A stretch of 63,819 nt of DNA, filler included, from Octopus bimaculoides (lineage: Eukaryota): NCBI RefSeq assembly GCF_001194135.2. It is 11 parts of 11 records of this genome, joined end to end, with 100 filler letters (N's around TTAATTAATTAA, not from the genome) between each part and the next. Parts side by side here need not be neighbours in the genome. Positions count along the whole stretch, not along the records: positions 25,957 to 40,179 come from NC_069000.1; 10 more parts are not named here. One strand, written 5' to 3'. A model generated the notes under the pieces. The model made no database searches and had not been told where the DNA came from. It saw only the letters and a list, made by a program, of their open reading frames with translations. Shown here one piece after another: positions 22,705-39,369 of this stretch. Each line of letters begins with the position of its first letter. Within the stretch, counting starts at the first letter, position 1. The position numbers and the translations under genes were made by a program.

Positions 22705-23487
22705 TGCCTAGCGGTGTTCAGTTGACAAGTCCCTTAACCCCTTGGGGGTCGCTGGGGCACTGCAGCCATTCAGCGTATCTTGGGTGAGAAAGCCTGGTGG
22801 GTGGGGGGGGCCCATCCCTCTCCAGGCTACACTCATTTCTACAGCTGAGTGAACTGGAGCAACGTGAAATGAAGTGTTTTGCTCAAGAACATGTAGTAGT
22901 CTATGTAGCTAAATAATTAAATGATCTCTCTTGCAAGAAGGTTTATAGAGTAACCTCCCTTTACTAAGTTTATCGAAGCATCTGTGTCATGAGACGCGAT
23001 TCTTAATTATTCAAGAAGCTTAGCGCTTCTCTTGGACGTTTCTAGAATGTCTAGCGTTCCATTGATAAAAACAGCTTGCTAACCCTGCTCTTTGCTTCAT
23101 AGTCGATTAGACTTAGAACCATTCACGTCATTGCTATATCCGTCTATTTCTCTATGCCACATGACATAAAGCCACCACTTAGCTGTTATTTATACATTTC
23201 CTGTTTCTGTACTTTCTTGCATAGATTACTTCCTTCAACTAGATTCTACATTTTGATTATGTATCATTATCGACCAGTAAATAAAATATATTTTTATGTA
23301 GTAAATATATAGTTCTTAAATTTATTCTTCTTCTCTGTAAGAACTCTTGTAATAAGATACACGCAGCCATGTCAACACCTGATACTGAATATATATTCCC
23401 GCTACAAACACAACGCATCGTCCGGTCCAGAAACCACAATCTTACGGTCATGAGACCAACTCCCTAACCACTAAGCCACGTGCCTCT
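22705..23487 (-). mobile_element. tRNA-derived SINE (family D) split by the solo LTR
   Basis: tRNA-like head at 23410-23487 and body at 22705-22891; homologous to the uninterrupted copy at about 20995-21133. Confidence 0.65.
22892..23406 (+). mobile_element. Solo LTR, 515 bp, inserted into a SINE
   Basis: TGTAG...CTACA termini, 4-bp TSD AACA (22888-22891 and 23407-23410), AATAAA at 23280-23285. The flanks rejoin into a continuous SINE sequence. Confidence 0.75.
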
Positions 23488-26021: not shown

Positions 26022-26682
26022 CGTGCGTGCTTTCGTGCGTGTACAGAAAATGCAGGATCAGAAGATGTCTCAGGCTAAGGTATTTTCTGATTTCAAAACC
26101 GAAAAACTAACCTGTCTTTTCTGCTTTCGACACTATTTTTTAATTTGGTGATTACTGTTTCTCGTGCCATAGGATATTTAACGCTTTCTTTGAGGGGCTT
26201 GTTTATATCATCCAAAGAATTTTGATGATCATGATGATTGTGATGGTGGCAGTGTTTAGTGCTAGGTACACAACTTCAATAGAAAGCCGTTCACATCCAA
26301 AGCCGTTCACTTCTTTACTAATACAAACGTGTTGCTGTATTGCAATATCCTTAGCATTCAGCGACATTCTTTTCTGTAGTATTTACTGAAAGTTTCAGAA
26401 GTTGCATTCTGTCTGTGTTCAACTTCACTTTAGCCACTCTGCTTTTGGTAAAACAGTGTGAAACTATTTTGGTATAGCGTTTCTGTAAAAGAGTAAAGAG
26501 TATATATATATATATATACAAAGTTAGATAGTTGAACACTTAGAAGCAGTTCGCATGGTCCAGCATTAAGTATAGTTTAGTTTCACATGGCAATTGTAGT
26601 TTATATTAATGAAACCACCTAATTTATTATTGTGATGCCCCTTGTTCTAAGATTTACATATTTTGATTCGGTTACTTTTCAG

Positions 26683-26988
26683 CGAGATCTTTCATGAAAA
26701 GTCTGGACATTGTTAACCCACCTATTGAAGTAGACAAGACACTGGTCTTCAGATGTGCAGCATATGTCACTGAACTTTATGGTTATAGTAACTTTCTATG
26801 GTTTGAAAGAAAACTTCGTGATACTCGTATACATATGAATACAGTAGAAGCTCAACGTCATTTCGAGTGTTTAATTCCAGTAGTGTCATTTCATAGGTAC
26901 ACTGTAAAACACAAGGACGTCGGTTTCACAAACATCACATGTTTTCTGAACGGTGAAACACTCACTAAACTACTCATCAAACAGGCAG
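26683..26988 (+). CDS. Ig-like domain exon (C2/CD80-like) of a small GPI-anchored protein
   Basis: Acceptor gttacttttcag|, donor |gtaagc, 306 nt, phase 1-1. Peptide has the B-strand Cys (LVFRC), Trp 15 residues later (FLWF), and F-strand KDVGFTNITC with Cys-Cys spacing 62 and an N-glycosylation sequon (NIT). Confidence 0.7.
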
Positions 26989-27053
26989 GTAAGCAAGTTT
27001 TCTTTGTGTTGCCTTCCTTAAAGCTTTTACTTTTTGTTATTGTTGCTGCTGCA

Positions 27054-27230
27054 GTGAGAGAAAGTTGTGTTGGAAGAGTACAGCAGGGTCCGCCACCATC
27101 CCCTGCCGCAGCCTCGTGGAGCTTTAGGTGTTTTTCGCTCAATAAACACTCACAACGCCTGGCCTGGGAATCAAAACCACAATCCTATGACCGCGAGTCC
27201 GCTGCCCTAACCACTGAGCCATTGCGCCTC
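27054..27230 (-). mobile_element. SINE family C, 5' half, in the intron after the Ig exon
   Basis: Nearly identical to 33953-34130. It creates the false extension of ORF 26694-27263. Confidence 0.85.
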
Positions 27231-27656
27231 CACTTGATCATAACTCATTGTTATCATATATGATCTTACGACCAACAGCGTAAACGATTTGACTGGCTCC
27301 AGCAAAAAGAAAACACTTCGCGAGAGTGCTTCATTTTGTCTGATTGACATAAAATAGGTACTAGTTCATATTTTACAGTTGAAGAACCAGCAATAGGAAA
27401 ATATAGCGCGTCAAATAAACGCCAAAATAAATAAACATACCTTCTACAAAGAGAATTTCTTTCAATACAAGTATTAAAGATGTATATAAAATATCACGAC
27501 AGAAATTATTGATTGAATTTCAGCTCAAGTTCAAATTTTTATCACGCATATATACATACGTACACATTTTGCTTTGATTTCGCTTTCCATTGGAAACTAA
27601 GATAAAACATTAAACATCATGTTTCTACATATTTTGTTTTCAATTTTTATTTCTAG

Positions 27657-27695
27657 GAAGCGAGCAGAAACCACTCGGACAAACAAATAATGCAG
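27657..27695 (+). CDS. 39-nt stalk exon of the Ig/GPI gene (GSEQKPLGQTNNA)
   Basis: Acceptor caatttttatttctag|, donor GCAG|gtatct, phase 1-1, keeps frame with the Ig exon. Confidence 0.6.
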
Positions 27696-27858
27696 GTATC
27701 TTTTATCTTTTAACGCTTGCTTTCTTTAGTTATTGAATTGTGGCCGTGCTAAGCCATTCTCTAATAGGGTTTTCGTCGAACAAATTAACACCAGTACTTA
27801 TTATATCAGTCACCATGTCCGAACTGATATGTTGTGGGTACGTAAACAAACCATCACT

Positions 27859-27897
<39 letters not shown>

Positions 27898-29441
27898 CGG
27901 CGTACGTACACTTTGTCTCTCATATACATATATACATATATAAATTGTAAATCCAAAAGAAAAAAAATAACAACAAAACTACACGACGGGCTTCCGCGCA
28001 ATTTCTGTCTGCCAAATTCACTTACAAGTCATTGGCTATTCTTAGACTATTTTAGAAGACATTTACCCAAGGATTGGCCTCGAGCCATACGCCCCCAAGC
28101 TTCAACAATCAAATTCATCTCACATGACAACATTGTGACTTGAGTCAGAATTCCTTTTTTTGTACGTAAGTGGCCCTGCCTTATTTAACATAATTCTGAA
28201 AATCACAGAAATAAACGTCTTCGTAAGATTCAAAAGTTTATTGAATAAATTCCACCGAGAAATACGAAGCAAACAATCGACATCCGAATATATTTCGGCA
28301 TAAAACTCTGTCCATGAGTAAGTAAAGCTTTGTTACAATATGACTTAATAGAGTACTCCAAGCAGTGTTGTTAAGTCTAACATGGTCTGAGCCAACAATG
28401 GCCAAAACGTTATACTACGTTATATACTGCGTGTAACCAAGACAATCCATGAATGATTACTGGGGAATAAGAGCAACGATGTCGTCGAGGAAACTCTGAG
28501 CGTGGAGGGGAAACAATAGATTTGTCTTGTCCGAAGAACTTTCTAGCCGGAGTCCATGATTTAATTCTAAAAATCCTTCGCCTGGCAGTGCTATTGTAAG
28601 ACACTGCTGGTTCGGGGTAAAGTCTACAAGCGTGGTGGCATTGCCTTTAGCCACATCCGCTCAAAACGCACACTGCACCATAAAAGTGTACTGCAAGCGA
28701 TCGTACAATTCTTGAGCGTCGCTGCCTTGAAGATTTACGTTCAGAAGCCACAATCATTTGCTGGATGGATCCGGTTATATTTTATCGTGAAAATCGCCCT
28801 GTCACTTCTCGTTTTTTTACTTCTACCAGGAAGTTATGACGAAAATGATCGTGTGATAAACGAGACTGAAAGGCAGACACTTTGTTTTTTTTAGCCAAAC
28901 TCTCATGACTTTTCAAGTTCCAGTTAGAAACGAAAATAAGCGTGGAGAGGGAGGTGCTTCCTCCCAGTAAATTTGTTGGACGGTGGATGAATGTAGCTAG
29001 AACTGTCTCAGACTAAACGTGAGCTTGTAGTTTGAGAAGCACGGCGGAGAGAGAAACATTTACCATGATACTACTTGTGAGCACGGTGACTCAGGATCTG
29101 TGGGTTACTTGGTTGCCCCAGGATGCATTTCCCTCTGGTAGAGAAATTTGTTGCAATAATTTTCTTGTTGTTATAGTTTTTTCCTTGTTTACACATCTTT
29201 ATGTAAATTCCCAATATCCTTGATTATTTTTTCTGAGGCGGCGAGCTGGCAGAATCGGGTGCACGTCGGAAAAATGCTTAGCGGCATTTTGCCCGGCTTG
29301 ACTTTTTCTTTTATCCTTTCGGAGTCGATAAAATAAGTAAAAGTTGAGTACTGGAGTCGACGTAATGGATTTCCCCCTCCCCAAAACTTTCTGGCCTAGT
29401 ACCAAAATTAGAATGAAATATATTTTTTCTCTCTGTTACAG

Positions 29442-29521
29442 AAAAATTGTACAGTGCAAATATTATTACTAAGATTTTAACATTTGCAACATACATGCTT
29501 TTTATTAGCAATTTGCGTTAA
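29442..29521 (+). CDS. Terminal exon of the Ig/GPI gene: hydrophobic GPI-signal-like tail EKLYSANIITKILTFATYMLFISNLR*
   Basis: Acceptor ttttttctctctgttacag|, phase 1, hydrophobic stretch ending at TAA with no cytoplasmic tail. Confidence 0.55.
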
Positions 29522-29934
29522 GGATCTCGAAAAATAAGCAACAGAATCCACCTGGTTAGTAAAATATTTTTCATTTTGTTTTCTGTGATTTTGTTATCCT
29601 TATATAAAACCTTATTGATTTAATTTGTGCTTACTTTGTGCTTACTACATTGCCTTTTTTTAAATCTCACTCTTGTTGCCATCATCCTTTTTAATGATAA
29701 GACTGGCATTGATCAAGCAAAGGTATCGGAGCACTGAACATCCCATAACATCCTTTATTTGTTCCAGTCATTGGACTGCGACCATGTTTGGCCATAACCT
29801 TGAAATACCGAACAAATACACTTCACTACTTATCTTTAAATCTGGTACTAATTCGATCGGTCACTTTTGCTGAACCGCTATGCGTTGAGGCTGTATACAA
29901 GCAACACTTGTTGTCAAGCGCTGACTGAGGCCAA

Positions 29935-30210
29935 ATACATTTAACGTTTTGGATACTTTAGGACCAGACTGTCGATTTTTAGGCATTATCGGAAAATCTA
30001 TTTTTCCACGCACTAGATGATGGTCAGTCCAGCTCTCTGCCCCTCTCATGATCCGAACGCTAGAAACGTATTTCATACCACGTTTCCTGATAAGAATATA
30101 ATCTATGAGATGCCAGTGTTTAGATCTTGGTTGCATCCAGGTGGTTTTATATTTATTTTTCTGCTTAAACAGGTCGCTATTGAGTGCTACTGGTAACATG
30201 TAATCCAGTA
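29935..30210 (-). mobile_element. RTE LINE endonuclease-domain fragment
   Basis: KNKYKTTWMQPRSKHWHLIDYILIR...VRIMRGAESWTDHHLVRGK matches the RTE APE C-terminal motifs. Confidence 0.85.
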
Positions 30211-30506
30211 CATCCTGTCGCATGGTCGTGTCGTCGGCCCCACCAGGTTTGCTTGGTGAGGAGGGTTTTGTTGGACACCCTACGGGATGAAAAAACATAC
30301 ATGCATACATACATACAAACAAACTTTCTAAATTGAAAACGCTTCCTTTTTTGCAGGTTACTAACCGGTGAGCTCCTTCGGCTAAACTTACAAGTCGCAG
30401 TCAAATAACATTTTTCCGGAAATAAATATTTGATTCAACACCACATATTGAGTGCTTTCTTCAGTTACTTCTCATTAATTTTTGATGTTGAAAACATATT
30501 ATATAA

Positions 30507-30562
<56 letters not shown>

Positions 30563-30659
30563 ATGCGAGCACGTGCAATATATATGTGTACATACACGTA
30601 CATATTTTCACCTATAGGTAAGTACATTGTATCTATCTTTTTCGAACTAGAATCAGTTT

Positions 30660-31880
30660 TTCCTAAGTTAGGGAAAGTATATATAGGAACGACAATCTCT
30701 TTTCTGTTGATAGGTGTAGTGTAGCAGAAGTAGAAATGTATAGGAAAATATTATTTAAACTCTTTCGAAATTTTGGTCTATCAATCACCATAGAAGCAGG
30801 TTACAGATCAGCTAATTTTCTAGATATATCAAGATTCAATATCGGATTATGTACACCTTCCCATAAATCAAACGATTTATACGAATGTATATGTCTGCAT
30901 ATGCCCAGATGCTGCACATAGACCAGTACTCAAGGTACGAGTACATAACGTGCGAGACACGAACAATTTCCTGAAGTGACAGCAACACAGCTATTGAAGG
31001 TAAATCCGACGTTAGATTTGGTAGTAGTAGTAGTACTAGTAATAGTAATAATGCTAAGTTATAGTAATGATCCTTTCTAGAATGGGTTCAAGGTCAAGCA
31101 TTTTATAGGAGGGGCATAGACAATTATAACGATCCCTGTGCTCAATCAGTAGTTACTTTACTGACATCGAAATCGTGAAAGACAAAATCGACCTTGGTGG
31201 TATTTGATCTCAGAACATAAAAACCGACGACATGCCAATAAGAATTTGTTCAGGTGTGTTAACGATTGTACCAACTCTCAGCACATTGATAAATTGTTGT
31301 AATGATAATAGTAGGAACTGTAATAATAACAGTATTAATCATATTATAATAATGACAGTAATATCATAAAGATAGTAGTATATATAATTAGTAATAGACA
31401 AATAACGCGTATAACTGTATTTATTATGCTGAAAGTAATGATAGTCATAGCAAGAATAATAGAATAAAATACGCTACTTTAGAAGGAAGAATAAGCGCCC
31501 TTTTGAAAATAAATGTCTACGTAGAGACATAGCACATAAATGTTCTGTCAAACACAAGACAATATATACCAGTATACAGGTGTGACAGAAGATCACTTCG
31601 ATAACCGATGGTGAAACAGCGTTTCTTCATTCCAGAATAAGAACGAAATACCTTAAATGACAGGACAAATTTGTTACCTCAATAAAGACAATGTAAGATG
31701 CTCATTCTTTTGTTCATTACTGCAGGCAGCCTTTCCTTATGATGGAAGTGATCTGGATTGTAATTCTGTATCGAAATTACCCCATCTGGATATTATAATG
31801 TAAGGACAACATTATTAATAAACATCTCGTAATAATTATTAGATTTCACCGTTGTTTTAGAAAAACATTTTGCAAGAACT
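30660..31880 (+). mobile_element. Penelope-like element fossil (RT and GIY-YIG remnants), interrupted by a SINE
   Basis: RKILFKLFRNFGLSITIEAG...NFLDI at 30736-30830, and a decayed CL...Y.G.TE..F..R...A.PY..C pattern at about 31500-31800. Confidence 0.6.
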
Positions 31881-32474
31881 ATTGAACTAATATTGGATAT
31901 GGGATTGCTTAGCCAGAAGGTTAAGCGCATCCATTGCCAACTTCCATCGCGATTTCTTTGATATCTGGAGACATTGATACAGCTTGTGGAAATTACTAGA
32001 ATTGAAACTGGTTACAGAGAGCGTTATTTAGTACATTGTATTCAATTATGCGGATCAATACAAGTACAATATCCGAGAAAAATGGACATAATTATTTCTA
32101 CGACGTAAAACCTGTCTTTATGTACTTGTTTTCTTTGATTGTATTAATTTTACACGTGCATTTTATTTAATTTTCTAATTAGAAATATACTCAGTAATGA
32201 GAACACAATGTAACCAGATGAACCGAATGATTCTGACTTTCGAGTCGTCAGTGAGAATGAGTAACCATTATATATTCAAGAAGACATGAATATGTATGTC
32301 TATCGACAGCAATTAATATCCGTAATGCGCATATATCTATGACAACTACGTATAGGTGTGTGTAGATATTAGTAGCGATATTTCTAGGTGAACTTGCAAA
32401 TAGATATGTATGTGCATAAATATGTATAAGTTAGTATGTGTATATGTAACTATATATACATATATGTGTGTATG

Positions 32475-32508
<34 letters not shown>

Positions 32509-32557
32509 TATAAATTTAATGAATGGAGTAAACGCATATTATAACTGCATACCTTTA

Positions 32558-32641
32558 TTCCGACATATGTTTCGAAGAATTACAATTTATGCGATCCATA
32601 GGAATCGCCGATGTTAAAAATGTAAACTTCTCCTCAGGGAA
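32558..32641 (-). ncRNA. Minimal type I hammerhead ribozyme motif with extended stem II
   Basis: Minus strand: ttcc-CTGAGGA-gaag...cttc-GAAAC-atat-GTC-ggaa. Stem II is extended by ttaca/tgtaa and a gcgattcc/ggatcgc hairpin; GUC cleavage triplet. Confidence 0.75.
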
Positions 32642-33787
32642 ATGTATGGGAACCAGCTTAAACGTAAGATATTATAACCGAATATATATANNNNNNNNNN
32701 NNNNNNNNNNNNNNNNNNNNNNNNNNNNNNNNNNNNNNNNNNNNNNNNNNNNNNNNNNNNNNNNNNNNNNNNNNNNNNNNNNNNNNNNNNNNNNNNNNNT
32801 ATATATACCGATATGTATATATCTGTGTATATACGTGTATATACGTGCATGAAGAGGTATGCATGTTTATGTGAGTGTACATATCGAGGTGTATTAGACG
32901 GACTTCTAAGCATGTGAGTGGTGCATGCGTGTAATCCATGTACAATCATGTATGAGAGTGGGAATATGAATTTAGCAAGCGGTCAATACTTTCCCTCAAA
33001 AACTCTTAATAGGGGCCTTAGTAATATCATATATATGCGTAAAGGACTCTGTTTGTTGTAAAACATATATATATAAAGAATTTGTTCTATAAAAAACTAC
33101 ATTTTTGACGTGCAATCACTTTGTCTCCTTTAAATATATACTGAATTCGCGTACAAAGCGCCAAATAAAGGACGGTCAAATTAAATGTATACAATAGACT
33201 ATTAGACTTAACTGAACAAAAGCTGTGTTGGTGTGCCGTACTGTCAGGGTGGTAGGAGATTTTAATATCCTGTTAAATTATTCTTTTCTCTTTCCATCTA
33301 TTTTAATCACATTCCTCCCTGTATTTTGCTTAATCGTAATCACTATTTTATAATTGCCTTAAGGATACATACAAATTGAAAAAATTAATCTACTTTTTGC
33401 TTGTGTTCAGACGAATTACTTTCGGCATGGACTGTTAATGAAGATTTCCTCAATACGTAGAAATAAAGCAGACGTTGTTAACATTGAAATGGCATTATGC
33501 AAGACTGGCTTGCTGAAACGTGTACACTAAACAATAAACGCAGTTAATTAACTACATTCTTTAATGCTTTCTTGTTATATGTATGTGTATGTGGGTACGT
33601 GTGTGCGTGTATGCATATGCATTTATGTATAATATATATATATAGCAAATTATGAGTTAGAGGTTATGGAACAATCTAAGGGATAAATGTATCTGTAGAC
33701 ACTACTGGTGTATTACCTCACTATGTATAGTCCTAGCTATAATGTATACAATAGTTGGTAATTTAAAGGTAAAACCGTGGTTTAATA

Positions 33788-34130
33788 TTGTTGTTGGCAC
33801 TCCGTCGCTTACGACGTCGAGAGTTCCAGTTGATCCGATCAACGGAACAGCCTGCTCGTGAAATTAACGTACAAGTGGCTGAGATTCAGCGTGGCACAGT
33901 GTGACAAGGCTGACCCTTTGAATTACAGGCACAACAGAAACAGGAAGTAAGGGTGAGAGAAAGTTGTGGTGGAAGAGTACAGCAGGGTTCGCCACCATCC
34001 CCTGCCGGAGCCTCGTGGAGCTTTAGGTGTTTTTCGCTCAATAAACACTCACAACGCCCGGTCTGGGAATCGAAACCGCAATCCTATGACCGCGAGTCCG
34101 CTGCCCTAACCACTGGACCATTGCGCCTCC
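33788..34130 (-). mobile_element. tRNA-derived SINE family C, copy with an internal deletion
   Basis: Head gaggcgcaatggtccagtggttagggc...gtttcgattcc; inverted relative to the copy at 34698-35083. Confidence 0.85.
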
Positions 34131-34697
34131 TTTTAAAGGATGGAAAGTAAAGTCAACCTCAGTGGAATTTGAACTCAGAACGTAGCGACAGACGAAATAC
34201 CGCCAAGCATTTCGCTCGGCGTGCTAAGAATTCTACCAGCTCACCGCCGTCGGTTTAATATATAGAGAAAAGAAAAGAAAAAGAAATGGAGCAACAATTA
34301 ACAATGAGAAGTTGATCATTGGTATTAAAAAGTCGCTGTTTAATCGTAGTTCGGAACCATTTACAGGCTGAGGCTAAAGATAACTCTCATTGTTGGCAAA
34401 GTAGTTGCCAGATTCAGCATCATTGACGTATGTAACATCAATAATTCATACAGATAAATCTGCTCGCTTACCAAATACAGTTATGGTAGGAGGAACTGAG
34501 AACGTTCAAAAAGCAGTACAAAGGGTCCAGTGGAGAGGAACGCCAATCGACTAAGCAGAGTTATTAGGTATTCTGAAGAAGAAACGGAGAGCTTGTTGCT
34601 GAGCACAAAGTCATAATTCGAAGAGATGAACGTACCGTTTAGTTTTCAACACTTTTCTGCTTCACCAGTAAGTTACTTGGTGGTATGTGTAGCAGTG

Positions 34698-35083
34698 GAT
34701 GCGCAATGGCCCAGTGGTTAGAGCAGCGGACTCACGATCATAGGATCGCGGTTTCGATTAACAGACCGGGCGTTATGAGTGTTTATTGAGCGAAAACACC
34801 TAAAGCTCCACGAGGCTCCGGCAGGGGATGGTGGCGAACTCTGTTGTACTCTTTCACCACAACTTTCTCTCACTCTTACTTCCTGTTTCTGTTGTGCCTG
34901 TAATTCAAAGGGTCAGCCTTGTCACACTCTGTGTCACGCTGAATATCCCCGAGAACTACGTTAAGGGTACACGTGTCTGTGGAGTGCTCAGCCACTTTCA
35001 CGTTAATTTCACGAGCAAGCTGTTCCGTTGATCGGATCAACTGGAACCGTCGACGTCGTAAGCGACGGAGTGCCAACAATAAA
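34698..35083 (+). mobile_element. tRNA-derived SINE family C, full length
   Basis: A box tggcccagtgg, B box gtttcgatt; body shared with 33788-34130 and 27054-27230. Confidence 0.85.
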
Positions 35084-35773
35084 NNNNNNNNNNNNNNNNN
35101 NNNNNNNNNNNNNNNNNNNNNNACAGACCGGGCGTTATGAGTGTTTATTGAGCGAAAACACCTAAAGCTCCACGAGGCTCCGGCAGGGGATGGTGGCGAA
35201 CTCTGTTGTACTCTTTCACCACAACTTTCTCTCACTCTTACTTCCTGTTTCTGTTGTGCCTGTAATTCAAAGGGTCAGCCTTGTCACACTCTGTGTCACG
35301 CTGAATATCCCCGAGAACTACGTTAAGGGTACACGTGTCTGTGGAGTGCTCAGCCACTTTCACGTTAATTTCACGAGCAAGCTGTTCCGTTGATCGGATC
35401 AACTGGAACCGTCGACGTCGTAAGCGACGGAGTGCCAACAATAAATGTGTAGCAGCAATCCAGAATGCTCGTGGGGTGGAGCAAATACCTTTTTTCTCAA
35501 CTGCCTGGATGACCCTACAATAAAGGAGTTTCGATAAGATATAACCCTGATAAGCCCAGCACTCCCAACGATTCACTTTGACATGAATCAATAGAGTTGG
35601 GAGAAAGCTTAGGAAGTTGTTAAGGCAGATAGGTTTAATCTCTACATCCAGTGTCCAGTGAAGTGTCATACTGAAAAATCAATTAGAAAAAATAACAAAC
35701 AAATGTGGTAAAAGAACGAAAATGTTTTGACTGTTCTCTTTTTATCTCTCTCTCACTTTCTCTCCTTCTCTTA

Positions 35774-35816
<43 letters not shown>

Positions 35817-35826
35817 NNNNNNNNNN

Positions 35827-35871
<45 letters not shown>

Positions 35872-36132
35872 GTCCCTTTCACTCTCTTCCTCTCCCTTTT
35901 CTATGACGTTTTTCATAATCTTTTACTGTAACTCTTTCTTGTCAATCTGCCTTCTTCTCTCCCTTTCTTACTTTAATATCTTTATAACTTTCCCTCACTT
36001 TTCTCTCCCGCGTCCAAAGTCGGTGTCTCTTTTTTAATCTTTCACTCAATCTCTTAATACTTCGAAATTCTCTATCTTTCTTTTCCCCCTTTGTACGTGT
36101 ATATGTGTGAGTGTGTGAGTATGTGTGAGTAT

Positions 36133-36165
<33 letters not shown>

Positions 36166-36723
36166 TCATTGTGTGTGCGTGTGTGTGTGTGTGTGAGTGC
36201 GCGTGTACTTCAGTTTCTGTCAAACTGTTTTCTATAAGTTTTACCTGCCTTCTCGAAGCAGAAAAGAGAAAGAGAGAGAAACAGACAGACAGAGAGAGAG
36301 GGAGAGAGAAATAGAGAGAGAGAGAAAAAGAAAGAAACAAGTTGGACTTGCGTTTTTCTCTGTATTTCTGTTGTGTTTGGCCATTTCGACTACGCTGTTT
36401 GTAACAGATATCTTTTCGTAATATTTCTAGCTTTCTGGAAGCCGACGATCATTTCTCCTCCAGCTTTATACTTGTCGCACAAGATCAACAATGTTATTAG
36501 TTATGATGTTACTAATGATGGCTTCCTACACTTCGGCCTGTAAGTTAATATTAAGAATCATATTTTCTTCAGTTACAATATTGAATCTTCTTGTCTTAGA
36601 TAACATGCTTTCTTCTTCGAAAGACGCAGAAAGACACACACAGAGACACAAACAAACACACACACAGACACAAACAAACAAACACACACATTCACACACA
36701 CACATACATACATACATACATAA

Positions 36724-37450
36724 GGTGGTTGTCTACTCCTTAAACAGAGTTTGACCATCTCCTGCACCTACACCTTAGCCCTTTCATGGCGTCTGATGTG
36801 GCTTTTTAAACCAGACAGTGTTTTGAAAAAACACCCACACAGATTGCACCTCTGATTTGCACTACCAATACCTGCAAGTAAGTTCTGCTCATTGTGGATC
36901 CTAACATGTCTTTTAAGACCCCCATTGGATTTGCAAACCCTCTGGCACACACCACATTCAAACGTGTGCACAGACATATAATCAGAATAGCTGGGTGAGG
37001 TTTGTTTTCCATGGGTTNNNNNNNNNNNNNNNNNNNNNNNNNNNNNNNNNNNNNNNNNNNNNNNNNNNNNNNNNNNNNNNNNNNNNNNNNNNNNNNNNNN
37101 NNNNNNNNNNNNNNNNNNNNNNNNNNNNNNNNNNNNNNNNNNNNNNNNNNNNNNNNNNNNNNNNNNNNNNNNNNNNNNNNNNNGGCTAATGAGCCCTGCT
37201 CTTGACAAGCATACACGAATGCAAACATTGCAGACCAAGCTTTCCCCATTCACTATACGAGCCGTGCGCTTTCGCGCAGCTCGCTTAAGTTCTTCATGCT
37301 GGATACGTGCTCTCTCAAAAGTGTCGATCCCCTCCTTAACCTGCTTCCTCCATCTGTGGCGATGAAAGGCATTGTTCTCCCAGTCAGTGTCCTGCATATC
37401 ACAGGCCTTTAATGAAGACTTGACACAGTCCTTAAATCGCAGCCTTGGTT
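36724..37450 (-). mobile_element. RTE (BovB-like) LINE 3' end carrying C-terminal C2H2 fingers
   Basis: KPRLRFKDCVKSSLK...W...A..R..WR..V..G is the RTE ORF2 C-terminus; then CxxC-x12-H-x3-H fingers, TAG at 36770-36768, a short 3' UTR and an (ATGT)n tail. Confidence 0.8.
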
Positions 37451-37470
37451 TCGAAAGACACAAGCAGACA

Positions 37471-37539
<69 letters not shown>

Positions 37540-37904
37540 ACACAAGCAAACACACACACACACACACTCACACACATACATACATACATACATACATACA
37601 TACATACATACATACATACATACTATATATCCCGTTCTGTCTGTGTTTGTAAAAGATTATAACGGCCGTATTTTTCAACTGATTTTCTTCAAACTGCGAA
37701 CAAACATTATTTATGTTCTGGGATGGTTTTAGACTCTTAAAATTTCTTACATAATCGGTAACGTGCCCCCCTGGAAGCAGAAAAAATCCGTTCCTTGGTT
37801 ACGTGGAGAAGGGTGGTAACACTTTGCGAAGTAACTTTCAGAAATTGATTGTCTCCCTTACATCCATTGGTCATAAAAGAATAAGAAGTATTGCTTTTTA
37901 TATT

Positions 37905-38440
37905 ATACTAACAGTATAGCCCGGCTTTGCCCGGGATTAAGTTAGGATTATTAAGCTAATCAAGTTCTTTATTTGAAACCAAATTAAGTAACATCAACGT
38001 CAAATTTGGGCGAAATGTGTTGAAATTAGTAAACTTTGGGCTGAAAATGAGTTGCAGACAACTTGATTGGATTATTCCATATGGAATTGGTTTATCGATT
38101 TTTTTCCCCTCATCGATTTTTTTTTTATCGTTTTTGGAGAACTTAAAGCATTGAAAGATCCCATGAGTCCTAGGTAATGCTGGCATCAAGTTTGAACAAA
38201 ATACATCAAAATTGGTAAAAGTTATGGTTGAAAATGGGGTGAAGCCAATTTTATTGGGAAATCCTATAAGGAATCGGTTTATCGATTGAAATTTTATCCT
38301 GATTAAATGGAAAATTCCATAAGGAATCAGTTTATTGATATTTCACCCTAAATAGGACTTAATTCAAAAACATCTATATTTACTGATTCAAAAACATCTA
38401 TATTTACACTTTGAAGTTTGTTTTCACACTCAACCCTGTT
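37905..38440 (-). mobile_element. Non-autonomous Helitron-like element
   Basis: Minus-strand end: hairpin cccgggcaaagccggg, then ...TTAG-T. A similar plus-strand end (hairpin + CTAG-T) lies at about 22345-22375. Confidence 0.4.
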
Positions 38441-39369
38441 CTGCAGAATCAGTGTCGCGACAGGAGGTTTGTGCCCATCTCTACGTTCTGAGTTCAAATT
38501 CCGCCGAAGTCGACTTTGCCTTTCATCCTTTCGGGGTCTAAAAAATAAGTACTAGTTGAACACGGGTCGATATAATCGACTATTCTCCACCTTCTCCAAG
38601 CCGCCATTGTGGGAAAAATTTTAAATAATAATAATAATAATGATAATAATAATGACCTCTGCCGATCAAACTCCCAACCCACAACTAAGTGTTAAGTGTA
38701 TATATACATGGGCAACACACACACACACTAAATTTTAAAAATGTTAGTAAGTAAATGTGTTTTGAAAAAGATTGGTAAATTTTCATATTAACACCCGCAC
38801 GATTTTCACTAGTGTTAGGGTCAGGGTTAGGGTTAGGTAGGTAATCGTGCGGGTATTAATGTCAACATTTACGAAAAGATTTTCAAAAAACTCACAGTTT
38901 GTAGGGAATAAATGCTTGTCGATCGTATTTGAAAAAGATGTCTCGCTATTTTTTTTTTTTGTTATCATGGTGAATGACGGAGTTAGAAATAACTTACTAT
39001 TCCCGCCAATTAGAATGAGGTCATTGGTAACCATAGGTACATATATATGTGTAGATATATGTGTGTATTTACGTATGATTGGTAGTGTATCTGTTTATTT
39101 GACTCTCACTCTTTTTCTTTCGTTTCTTTGTCTTTTTTCTTGGATCGTTCGTAAACGTTCATAAGAGAAAGTAGCAATTGAAACGATTTGTAAGAGGAAT
39201 AGAAATAGTTAAGTAGATTGTTTTAGAGGGGCAAAGTAATTTTTACGTAGTTTTATGGATTTTATTCGTAATTAGGAGTTATTTTGACTGAAAAAATGAC
39301 GCTGTGACCTAACTTATTGTATTTAGAATATTAATTCCGATTCTTTCATTCAAGAAATTTGGAATTGTA

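What the first reader, a model, noticed from the sequence alone, without database searches (positions are those of the whole stretch)
26683..29521. Unannotated GPI-anchored single-Ig-domain protein with Thy-1-like architecture
Three phase-1 exons with strong splice sites join in frame: Ig domain, 13-aa stalk, and hydrophobic tail ending at the stop. With the signal exon the precursor is 154 aa, with one sequon and an extra Cys. Signal exon + one Ig exon + GPI tail is the layout of vertebrate Thy-1/CD90, and from memory a Thy-1-like GPI glycoprotein was described in squid nervous tissue. Homology to either is not shown. The ORF track hides the gene because it reads through into a SINE.
Basis: partly seen in the sequence, partly recalled or inferred. 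Interest (0 to 1): 0.8.

Follow-up and report, generated by a model that had tools for sequence, protein, structure and literature searches.

The report
Annotated octopus two-Ig surface protein gene
The three exons are real, but they are the last three coding exons of an already annotated Octopus bimaculoides gene for a two-domain (not one-domain) immunoglobulin-like surface protein with a probable GPI-anchor tail, from an octopus-only, tandemly repeated, fast-evolving family that shows no specific relation to Thy-1.

Summary
The observation inside 26683-29521 holds. Exons 26683-26988, 27657-27695 and 29442-29521 join in frame across phase-1 introns. They encode a beta-sandwich domain with the Cys-Trp-Cys Ig signature, a 13-aa stalk and a hydrophobic C-terminal tail.

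- The gene is annotated. It is RefSeq LOC106880715 of Octopus bimaculoides (XP_014786282.1, UniProt A0A0L8FWG9 'Ig-like domain-containing protein'), and its model uses exactly these junctions.
- The protein has two Ig-like domains. The true signal exon and a first Ig exon lie upstream of the piece.
Its donor is weak. It is absent from O. vulgaris, unrelated to the family's real signal exons, and found in no database protein.

No specific similarity to Thy-1 was found. A GPI anchor is plausible but only inferred: a conserved [D/N]-N-A site, a 7-aa spacer and a hydrophobic end. The tail exon is the best-conserved part among paralogs.

The family was found only in octopods, with 44 representatives and at least 7 tandem copies in about 100 kb. 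It includes GPI-like, transmembrane and tail-less forms. The Ig exon diverges about twice as fast as its flanking introns. That is the one feature worth following up.

The parts
26683..26988 (+). Coding exon 3 of LOC106880715: second Ig-like domain (D2), 306 nt, phase-1 on both sides. Carries the B-strand Cys, C-strand Trp, F-strand Cys, one extra conserved Cys and one NIT sequon.
   Evidence: Frame and splice sites. Identical to residues 124-226 of XP_014786282.1. AF2 model gives 7 strands with pLDDT 90-98. C24/W39/C86 are invariant in 29 family members.
27657..27695 (+). Coding exon 4: 13-aa polar stalk (G)SEQKPLGQTNNA. It ends in the candidate GPI omega site N-N-A.
   Evidence: Modelled as disordered, pLDDT <50-60. 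Same splice sites in O. vulgaris. [D/N]-N-A is conserved in the close paralogs.
29442..29521 (+). Last coding exon: EKLYSANIITKILTFATYMLFISNLR plus the TAA stop. This is the spacer and hydrophobic C-terminal peptide, a GPI-attachment-signal-like tail.
   Evidence: 95% nt identity to the O. vulgaris ortholog and 91% to paralog tail exons, against 83% and 75% for D2. Best 15-mer Kyte-Doolittle score 1.84, with 4 residues after it. Modelled as a helix.
27053..27234 (.). SINE-like dispersed repeat inserted in the D2-stalk intron. It extends the mechanical ORF past the donor site.
   Evidence: There are three further copies in the piece and three in the O. vulgaris locus, but none at the orthologous site: the orthologous alignment stops at 27052. 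Neither ARAGORN nor Rfam detects a tRNA.
36491..36539 (+). Signal-peptide exon (MLLVMMLLMMASYTSA, 49 nt, phase 1, donor T|gtaagt) of the next tandem paralog. It shows what a genuine signal exon of this family looks like.
   Evidence: ORF. Called gene start at L001 26076. Aligns with the LOC106880715 and O. vulgaris signal exons. nhmmer E=2.6e-50.

Best explanation
Positions 26683-29521 hold the last three coding exons of Octopus bimaculoides LOC106880715 (chromosome CM046620.1, about 16.2597-16.2626 Mb). The full gene has five coding exons, all separated by phase-1 introns:
- signal peptide (MLLAMMILMMASDTFA)
- Ig-like domain 1
- a 13-aa stalk
- a hydrophobic tail

Inferred mechanism:
- The 265-aa precursor enters the ER through its signal peptide.
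- It folds into two disulfide-bonded Ig-like beta sandwiches and is N-glycosylated.
- The C-terminal ~26-29 residues are removed by GPI transamidase at the conserved [D/N]-N-A site at the stalk/tail junction.
- That leaves a two-Ig ectodomain tethered to the outer membrane leaflet by a GPI anchor.

Tail-less (secreted) products and paralogs with a true transmembrane helix plus cytoplasmic tail also exist, so the family provides one ectodomain type in three membrane topologies.

The gene is one of at least 7 same-strand tandem paralogs of a family found only in octopods. Its D2 exon changes faster than the neighbouring introns. That fits a cell-surface recognition or adhesion role with a rapidly evolving binding face.

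Shown: gene identity, exon structure, two-domain beta-sandwich fold, taxonomic range, tandem array, rate excess. Inferred: GPI anchoring, secretion, function.
For: Identity and structure:
- 100% match to XP_052831156.1 and to XP_014786282.1 = UniProt A0A0L8FWG9.
- The window maps exactly onto GCA_001194135.2 CM046620.1.
- The D1 exon and its phase-1 junctions were read.
- The O. vulgaris ortholog CAI9737735.1 keeps all three exons, their splice sites and the tail.

Fold:
- AF2 two-domain model: pLDDT 88.6, pTM 0.73.
- Foldseek found 369 PDB matches at E<=1e-3. The top ones are butyrophilin IgV-IgC ectodomains, CD4 D1D2, Fabs and TCRs.
- The Cys/Trp/Cys signature is invariant.
- Weak profile hits cover D2, to Ig light-chain constant domains and FcgammaRII domain 2 (E 0.003-0.01).
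- 3 of 38 relatives hit Pfam 'ig'.

GPI signal:
- Candidate omega N-N-A, 7-aa spacer, ~15-19 hydrophobic residues, then 4 residues to the C-terminus.
- The same layout occurs in paralogs, and more classically in distant ones, e.g. ...SGSGVQFSKWVLIINLILLLLDVAVSR.
- The tail exon is the most conserved exon.

Family:
- 44 representatives at E<=1e-3. Every named one is Octopus or Argonauta.
- The tandem array was mapped.

Rate:
- D2 exon 82.6% identical versus introns 91.5% (p=9e-6).
- Nonsynonymous sites versus intron p=6e-7.
Against: - No transcript reads could be inspected. Support for splicing rests on gene models: the same 265-aa protein appears in RefSeq and in UniProt, plus the separate O. 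vulgaris annotation, plus splice-site conservation.
- No dedicated signal-peptide or GPI predictor was available. The tail is only moderately hydrophobic and contains a Lys.
- Pfam finds no domain in this protein.
- A model of D2 alone gives only weak, generic beta-sandwich matches, best E 1.1e-3.
- dN/dS of 1.45 is not significantly above 1 (p=0.48). The rate excess could come from gene conversion by an unsampled paralog.
Confidence: 0.8

Rival explanations
1. One reading: an independent (or alternative-promoter) transcript starts at the hydrophobic mini-exon 26225-26265 and yields a single-Ig, Thy-1-like GPI protein of about 153-154 aa.
For: - MIMMIVMVAVFSA is hydrophobic and Met-rich, like the family's real signal peptides.
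- It becomes in-frame if the second AG at 26685-26686 is used as acceptor (this gave the 153-aa query).
- Single-Ig plus tail products are predicted elsewhere in the family, though with D1 rather than D2: P0011, P0016, P0046.
Against: - The exon is 41 nt, phase 2, and out of frame with the conserved phase-1 acceptor at 26683.
- The donor TAG|GTACAC lacks the consensus +4 to +6 bases.
- The sequence is a degenerate (ATG/GAT)n-like tract.
- A profile of three genuine signal exons does not detect it even at E<=10.
- Region 26043-26484 has no blastn counterpart in the O. vulgaris intron.
- No protein among 5.8 billion carries this N-terminus.
Confidence: 0.03
2. The hydrophobic tail is not cleaved. 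It serves as a C-terminal transmembrane anchor with a 4-residue cytoplasmic end (SNLR).
For: - AF2 models residues 217-242 as one continuous helix.
- Some paralogs (P0027, P0039) are genuine type I membrane proteins.
- No GPI predictor or experiment was available.
Against: - The hydrophobic stretch is short (~15-17 residues), holds Lys, Thr and Tyr, and is only moderately hydrophobic (KD 1.84).
- There is no basic stop-transfer cluster and no cytoplasmic domain.
- A conserved small-residue triplet sits 7 residues upstream.
- The true transmembrane paralogs look quite different, with 23-25 strongly hydrophobic residues followed by RKK/RKR.
- By established rules for GPI signals, this is the GPI pattern.
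Confidence: 0.12
3. This copy is a decaying or functionless member of the tandem array, and the high divergence reflects relaxed constraint.
For: - dN/dS is about 1.4, not distinguishable from 1.
- The array has many paralogs and partial products.
Against: - The reading frame, all splice sites, and all Cys/Trp core residues are intact in both species.
- The F-G strands and the tail are nearly invariant.
- The exon diverges faster than the introns, which neutral decay cannot produce.
Confidence: 0.05

Closest known systems
Thy-1 / CD90 (vertebrates)
   Same: Small IgSF surface glycoprotein. Has an N-terminal signal, a C-terminal hydrophobic peptide of GPI-signal type encoded in its own last exon, and domain exons bounded by phase-1 introns. 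(The Thy-1 gene layout is from my own knowledge.)
   Different: Thy-1 has one V-type domain; this protein has two domains plus a separate stalk exon. No sequence relationship was found: hhalign probability 3%, matching only the generic D-x-x-x-Y-x-C motif of domain 1 (using a Thy-1 sequence recalled from memory). D2 looks C-type rather than V-type.
Two-Ig GPI-anchored IgSF receptors such as CD48, the GPI isoform of CD58, and FcgammaRIIIB (own knowledge)
   Same: Signal + two Ig domains + GPI signal. These families also mix GPI-anchored, transmembrane and soluble forms, as seen here. There are weak profile hits to FcgammaRII domain 2.
   Different: No significant sequence homology. This is an independent octopod-restricted family, and each domain carries extra conserved cysteines (5 in D1, 3 in D2).
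Butyrophilin ectodomains (BTN3A1/BTN2A1; IgV-IgC)
   Same: Best structural matches of the two-domain model: Foldseek E 2e-6 to 5e-5, TM about 0.5 over ~220 columns.
   Different: Only 11-15% identity. Butyrophilins are type I membrane proteins with a B30.2 cytoplasmic domain. The similarity is at the fold level only.
Squid brain glycoprotein Sgp1 (Williams, Tse & Gagnon 1988, Immunogenetics 27:265)
   Same: A cephalopod small surface glycoprotein, reported as structurally similar to Thy-1. The citation was verified.
   Different: No squid or cuttlefish protein appeared among the family's hits.

Membership tests
Thy-1/CD90 | Ectodomain made of a single V-type Ig domain | tested here: not met
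   The product has two beta-sandwich domains, and the D1 exon lies upstream of the piece.
Thy-1/CD90 | Detectable sequence homology to Thy-1 | tested here: not met
All phmmer hits are octopod proteins.
Thy-1/CD90 | Gene layout of signal exon, one Ig exon, tail exon | tested here: not met
There are five coding exons: signal, D1, D2, stalk, tail.
Thy-1/CD90 | GPI anchor | tested here: inconclusive
   The sequence pattern fits. No predictor or experiment was available.
Immunoglobulin superfamily domain | Greek-key beta sandwich with B-strand Cys, C-strand Trp and F-strand Cys | tested here: met
   C24/W39/C86 of the D2 exon are invariant in the family. The model has 7 strands at pLDDT >90.
Immunoglobulin superfamily domain | Structural similarity to solved IgSF proteins | tested here: met
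   The two-domain model gives 369 matches at E<=1e-3, all IgSF. Caveat: D2 alone gives only weak generic beta-sandwich matches, best E 1.1e-3.
Immunoglobulin superfamily domain | Significant match to a curated Ig profile (Pfam) | tested here: not met
   No Pfam hit for this protein or its closest relatives. Only 3 of 38 relatives hit PF00047, best E 2.5e-4. The UniProt name 'Ig-like domain-containing protein' comes from the source.
Immunoglobulin superfamily domain | One domain per exon with phase-1 introns | tested here: met
GPI-anchored proteins | Cleavable N-terminal signal peptide | tested here: inconclusive
   The hydrophobic N-terminus MLLAMMILMMASDTFA has its own exon and is conserved across paralogs. 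No signal-peptide predictor was available.
GPI-anchored proteins | C-terminal signal: small omega/omega+2 residues, 5-10 aa spacer, hydrophobic stretch running to the C-terminus, no cytoplasmic domain | tested here: met
   My own heuristic gives N-N-A, a 7-aa spacer, a hydrophobic 15-mer (KD 1.84) and 4 residues after it. The layout is conserved in the ortholog and paralogs.
GPI-anchored proteins | Release by PI-PLC / presence of the anchor | not testable with these tools
   Needs an experiment.
Squid Sgp1 | Sequence similarity to the published Sgp1 peptide sequence | not testable with these tools
   The sequence is not held here. No decapodiform hits were found.
Octopod two-Ig family (LOC106880715 and paralogs) | Signal + D1 (5 conserved Cys) + D2 (3 conserved Cys) with significant sequence similarity | tested here: met
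   100% identity to LOC106880715. E values of 1e-36 to 1e-127 to relatives.

The most novel reading that the evidence does not exclude
The octopod-only, tandemly amplified two-Ig family could be a diversifying cell-surface recognition system for immune, self/non-self or neuronal recognition. Supporting features: it comes in GPI-like, transmembrane and secreted forms, and the segment of D2 between the B-strand Cys and the extra Cys (window 26755-26870) evolves faster than neutral intron sequence. On this reading D2 carries a hypervariable binding face under positive selection.
Probability: 0.15. Interest if true: 0.6.

Novelty: new member of a known kind. Interest (0 to 1): 0.27.

Why it matters
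As stated (a hidden, unannotated Thy-1 homologue in octopus), the finding would have been striking, but it does not hold. What remains is an annotated gene that nobody has characterised. It belongs to a lineage-restricted IgSF family with no literature. Octopus genome work has stressed protocadherin and zinc-finger expansions. A second clustered, rapidly evolving family of small Ig surface proteins with interchangeable membrane anchors would be a modest but useful addition to the catalogue of cephalopod cell-recognition molecules. It is also a candidate for expression mapping.

Tried and rejected
1. Signal exon at 26225. It was tested for phase, for homology to true signal exons by alignment and by an nhmmer profile, for conservation in O. 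vulgaris and for presence in any protein. It is rejected. The apparent resemblance in the MAFFT alignment was not supported statistically.

2. Pfam on the three-exon product and on full-length relatives gave no hits. A phmmer search of PDB sequences gave none.

3. Transcript-derived contigs were sought through exact-product look-ups. Only the genome assemblies carry the proteins, so there is no direct RNA evidence.

4. A third homolog search with a 38-sequence profile added no new taxa.

5. Gene conversion as the cause of the D2 divergence. No donor was found among the paralog D2 exons sampled from O. bimaculoides (four, in L001 and L003-L005); all are 72-76% identical in the variable segment. 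The array was not sampled completely, so this stays open.

6. The Rfam and ARAGORN scans of the piece did not confirm a tRNA-derived origin for the SINE-like repeat. The mir-297/mir-466 matches are far below gathering scores and lie in simple repeats.

7. A literature search for the LOC identifiers and for octopus GPI-anchored IgSF proteins found nothing on this family.
Full report
**What is in the sequence**

The piece is Octopus bimaculoides DNA. Every 30-mer sampled along 26657-39257 maps colinearly to GCA_001194135.2 chromosome CM046620.1. The offset is window position minus 10415 = position in locus L001, where L001 is CM046620.1:16243460-16272565.

- 26683-26988 (306 nt)
- 27657-27695 (39 nt)
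- 29442-29521 (80 nt, including TAA)

All have polypyrimidine-AG acceptors, and the first two have CAG|gta donors. Joined, they give one open frame:

RSFMKSLDIV...TKLLIKQA / GSEQKPLGQTNNA / EKLYSANIITKILTFATYMLFISNLR*

It contains one NIT sequon and a third Cys. The mechanical ORF 26694-27263 does read through the first donor into a repeat. So the core observation is correct.

A search with the joined product found XP_052831156.1, 'uncharacterized protein LOC106880715 isoform X5', at 100% identity (E=6e-89).

- Its cluster mate XP_014786282.1 (isoform X4, 265 aa) has the same sequence as UniProt A0A0L8FWG9, 'Ig-like domain-containing protein'.
- Upstream of RSFMK, however, the protein carries a signal peptide (MLLAMMILMMASDTFA) and a first ~108-aa domain.
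- These are encoded at L001 10001-10049 and 12470-12793 (window about 20416 and 22885-23208). Both lie outside the piece I was given.
- The D1 exon ends ...AAAG|gtcagt. Its final G plus the CG at 26683-26684 makes the Ala codon before Arg, which confirms the phase-1 acceptor at 26683.

The gene therefore has five coding exons and four phase-1 introns, with one domain per exon. That is the general IgSF pattern.

The only hydrophobic ATG-initiated stretch upstream within the piece is 26225-26265, ATG...GCT AG|GTACAC (MIMMIVMVAVFSA).

- It is 41 nt, not the 40 nt needed for a 154-aa product.
- It is therefore phase 2. At the 26683 acceptor it gives ...EIFHEKSGHC*.
- It is in frame only with a second AG four bases further on, at 26685-26686.
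- Its donor is poor, and the tract is a degenerate ATG/GAT repeat.
- An nhmmer profile built from three genuine signal exons recovers all three at E<=1e-50 but does not see this site at E<=10.
- The surrounding region 26043-26484 has no counterpart in the O. vulgaris intron.
- My 153-aa query carrying this N-terminus found no protein that includes it.

I treat it as a chance ORF.

**Conservation**

The O. vulgaris protein CAI9737735.1 (286 aa) has the same five-part layout. Its tail is ...ANAEKLYNANIMTKIVTFATYMLFISNLR. In its locus (L002) all six splice sites of the three exons are conserved.

**Fold**

An AlphaFold2 model of isoform X5 with a 38-sequence family alignment is confident (mean pLDDT 88.6, pTM 0.73).

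- It shows two beta sandwiches, a disordered stalk (residues 209-223) and a C-terminal helix.
- Foldseek against the PDB gave 369 matches at E<=1e-3. Those listed are all IgSF: butyrophilin IgV-IgC ectodomains, CD4 D1D2, Fabs and TCRs.
- In D2, Cys24, Trp39 and Cys86 (exon numbering) are invariant across the family, and Cys62 is nearly so.
- A family profile hits Ig light-chain constant domains and FcgammaRII domain 2 weakly over the D2 region (E 0.003-0.01).

Caveats:
- Pfam reports nothing for this protein, and only 3 of 38 relatives touch PF00047.
- A model of D2+stalk+tail alone (pLDDT 87.7) retrieves only weak, generic beta-sandwich matches, best E 1.1e-3: TRAP subunits, GH3 C-terminal domains, ASF1, an MHC-like protein (MILL2) and CTLA-4.

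D2 is thus a divergent Ig-like domain, probably C-type. It is not a V domain like that of Thy-1.

**The tail**

No GPI predictor was available, so I applied the textbook rules in a script.

- Candidate omega triplet: N-N-A, the last three codons of the stalk exon. It is A-N-A in O. vulgaris and D-N-A in several paralogs.
- A 7-residue spacer (EKLYSAN).
- A hydrophobic 15-mer (KD 1.84).
- Then four residues to the C-terminus.

More distant paralogs have textbook signals, e.g. ...SGSGVQFSKWVLIINLILLLLDVAVSR. Two others (P0027, P0039) instead have a 23-25-residue transmembrane segment followed by RKK/RKR and a cytoplasmic tail. Several products stop before any tail.

The tail exon is the best-conserved exon. 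It is 95% identical to the ortholog and 91% to paralog tail exons, against 83% and 75% for D2. A GPI anchor is the most likely reading, but it is an inference.

**The family**

An exhaustive phmmer search of 1.84 billion representatives found 44 proteins at E<=1e-3. Every one that carries a name is from O. bimaculoides, O. vulgaris, O. sinensis or Argonauta hians. Two profile searches added no other taxa.

On CM046620.1, at least seven same-strand paralogs lie between 16.24 and 16.35 Mb. The signal exon of the next one is inside the piece at 36491-36539.

No paper mentions these loci. Its sequence could not be obtained, and no squid protein is among the hits.

**An unexpected rate pattern**

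Against the O. vulgaris ortholog, the D2 exon is 82.6% identical. By contrast, 1606 aligned intron and 3'-flank positions around the three exons are 91.5% identical (Fisher p=9e-6).

- Nonsynonymous sites alone exceed the intron rate (p=6e-7).
- Nei-Gojobori dN/dS is 1.45, which is not significantly above 1 (p=0.48).
- Most differences fall between the B-strand Cys and the extra Cys (window 26755-26870). There the ortholog (72.7%) is no closer than the paralogs (75-76%).
- The F-G strands and the tail are almost invariant.
- No conversion donor was found among the sampled paralogs, but the array was not sampled fully.

Positive selection on a binding face and conversion from an unsampled copy both remain possible.

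**Verdict**

The exons are real, and the Ig-like plus GPI-like reading of them is reasonable. The headline claims are not supported. The gene is not unannotated, it does not have a single Ig domain, it does not have Thy-1 architecture, and it has no signal exon of its own in the piece. It is a member of an uncharacterised, octopod-restricted, tandemly expanded two-Ig family within the well-known kind of small IgSF surface proteins.

Noticed in passing
window 36491-36539 (+): A genuine 49-nt, phase-1 signal-peptide exon (MLLVMMLLMMASYTSA|gtaagt) of the next tandem paralog, whose product is 263 aa. Its later exons lie beyond the end of the piece.
   Followed up: partly
window 26755-26870 (within the D2 exon): A hypervariable segment. 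Identity to the O. vulgaris ortholog is 72.7% here, against 92-95% in the flanking introns. Overall the exon diverges about twice as fast as the introns (p~1e-5). The cause, selection or gene conversion, is unresolved.
   Followed up: partly
window 27053-27234; also 33953-34130 (+), 34694-34874 (-), 35124-35236 (-): A ~182-bp dispersed SINE-like repeat. The copy in the D2-stalk intron is absent at the orthologous O. vulgaris site, so it inserted after the species split. Neither ARAGORN nor Rfam recognises a tRNA part.
   Followed up: partly
window 36768-37613 (-): A 281-aa ORF with two C2H2 zinc fingers (Pfam PF00096, E=4.8e-8). It is interrupted by a 166-N assembly gap and lies in the first intron of the next paralog. 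It is probably a transposable-element or retro-copy remnant.
   Followed up: no
window 32691-32799, 35084-35122, 35817-35826, 37018-37183: Assembly gaps (runs of N). An identical ~186-bp block occurs twice, at 34779-34964 and 35141-35326, 362 bp apart on either side of the 35084-35122 gap. This may be a scaffolding artefact.
   Followed up: no
L003 23098-23177; L005 8811-8890 and 20815-20887; L002 43567-43646: Tail exons of paralogs are 90-95% identical in nucleotides to the window's tail exon, although the Ig exons are only 66-75% identical. One lies about 4 kb downstream of the annotated end of LOC106880713 isoform X2, which stops right after D2. That suggests tail-plus and tail-less isoforms.
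   Followed up: partly
family proteins P0011 (RefSeq LOC106880715 isoform X6), P0016, P0046: Predicted products with signal + domain 1 + hydrophobic tail and no D2. A single-Ig GPI-like layout therefore does occur in the family's gene models, but with D1. The P0011 exons are not in the 29-kb locus around this gene, although RefSeq files it under the same LOC.
   Followed up: partly
family alignment A1 (P0004 numbering C41, C84, C96, C103, C111; C149, C187, C211): Conserved cysteines are odd in number in each domain, five in D1 and three in D2. This suggests a possible interdomain disulfide.
   Followed up: no
O. sinensis XP_036366491.1 (P0002) versus O. vulgaris CAI9737735.1 (P0005): The O. 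sinensis model reads the stalk exon in another frame (…STGSKRAETTLGNS*) and ends without the tail. This could be a one-base difference, an assembly error or a model error, or a real secreted variant.
   Followed up: no
window 29861-30322 (-): A 153-aa ORF about 340 bp downstream of the stop codon with no Pfam hit. From its sequence alone it looks like a fragment of a retroelement endonuclease. This was not verified.
   Followed up: no
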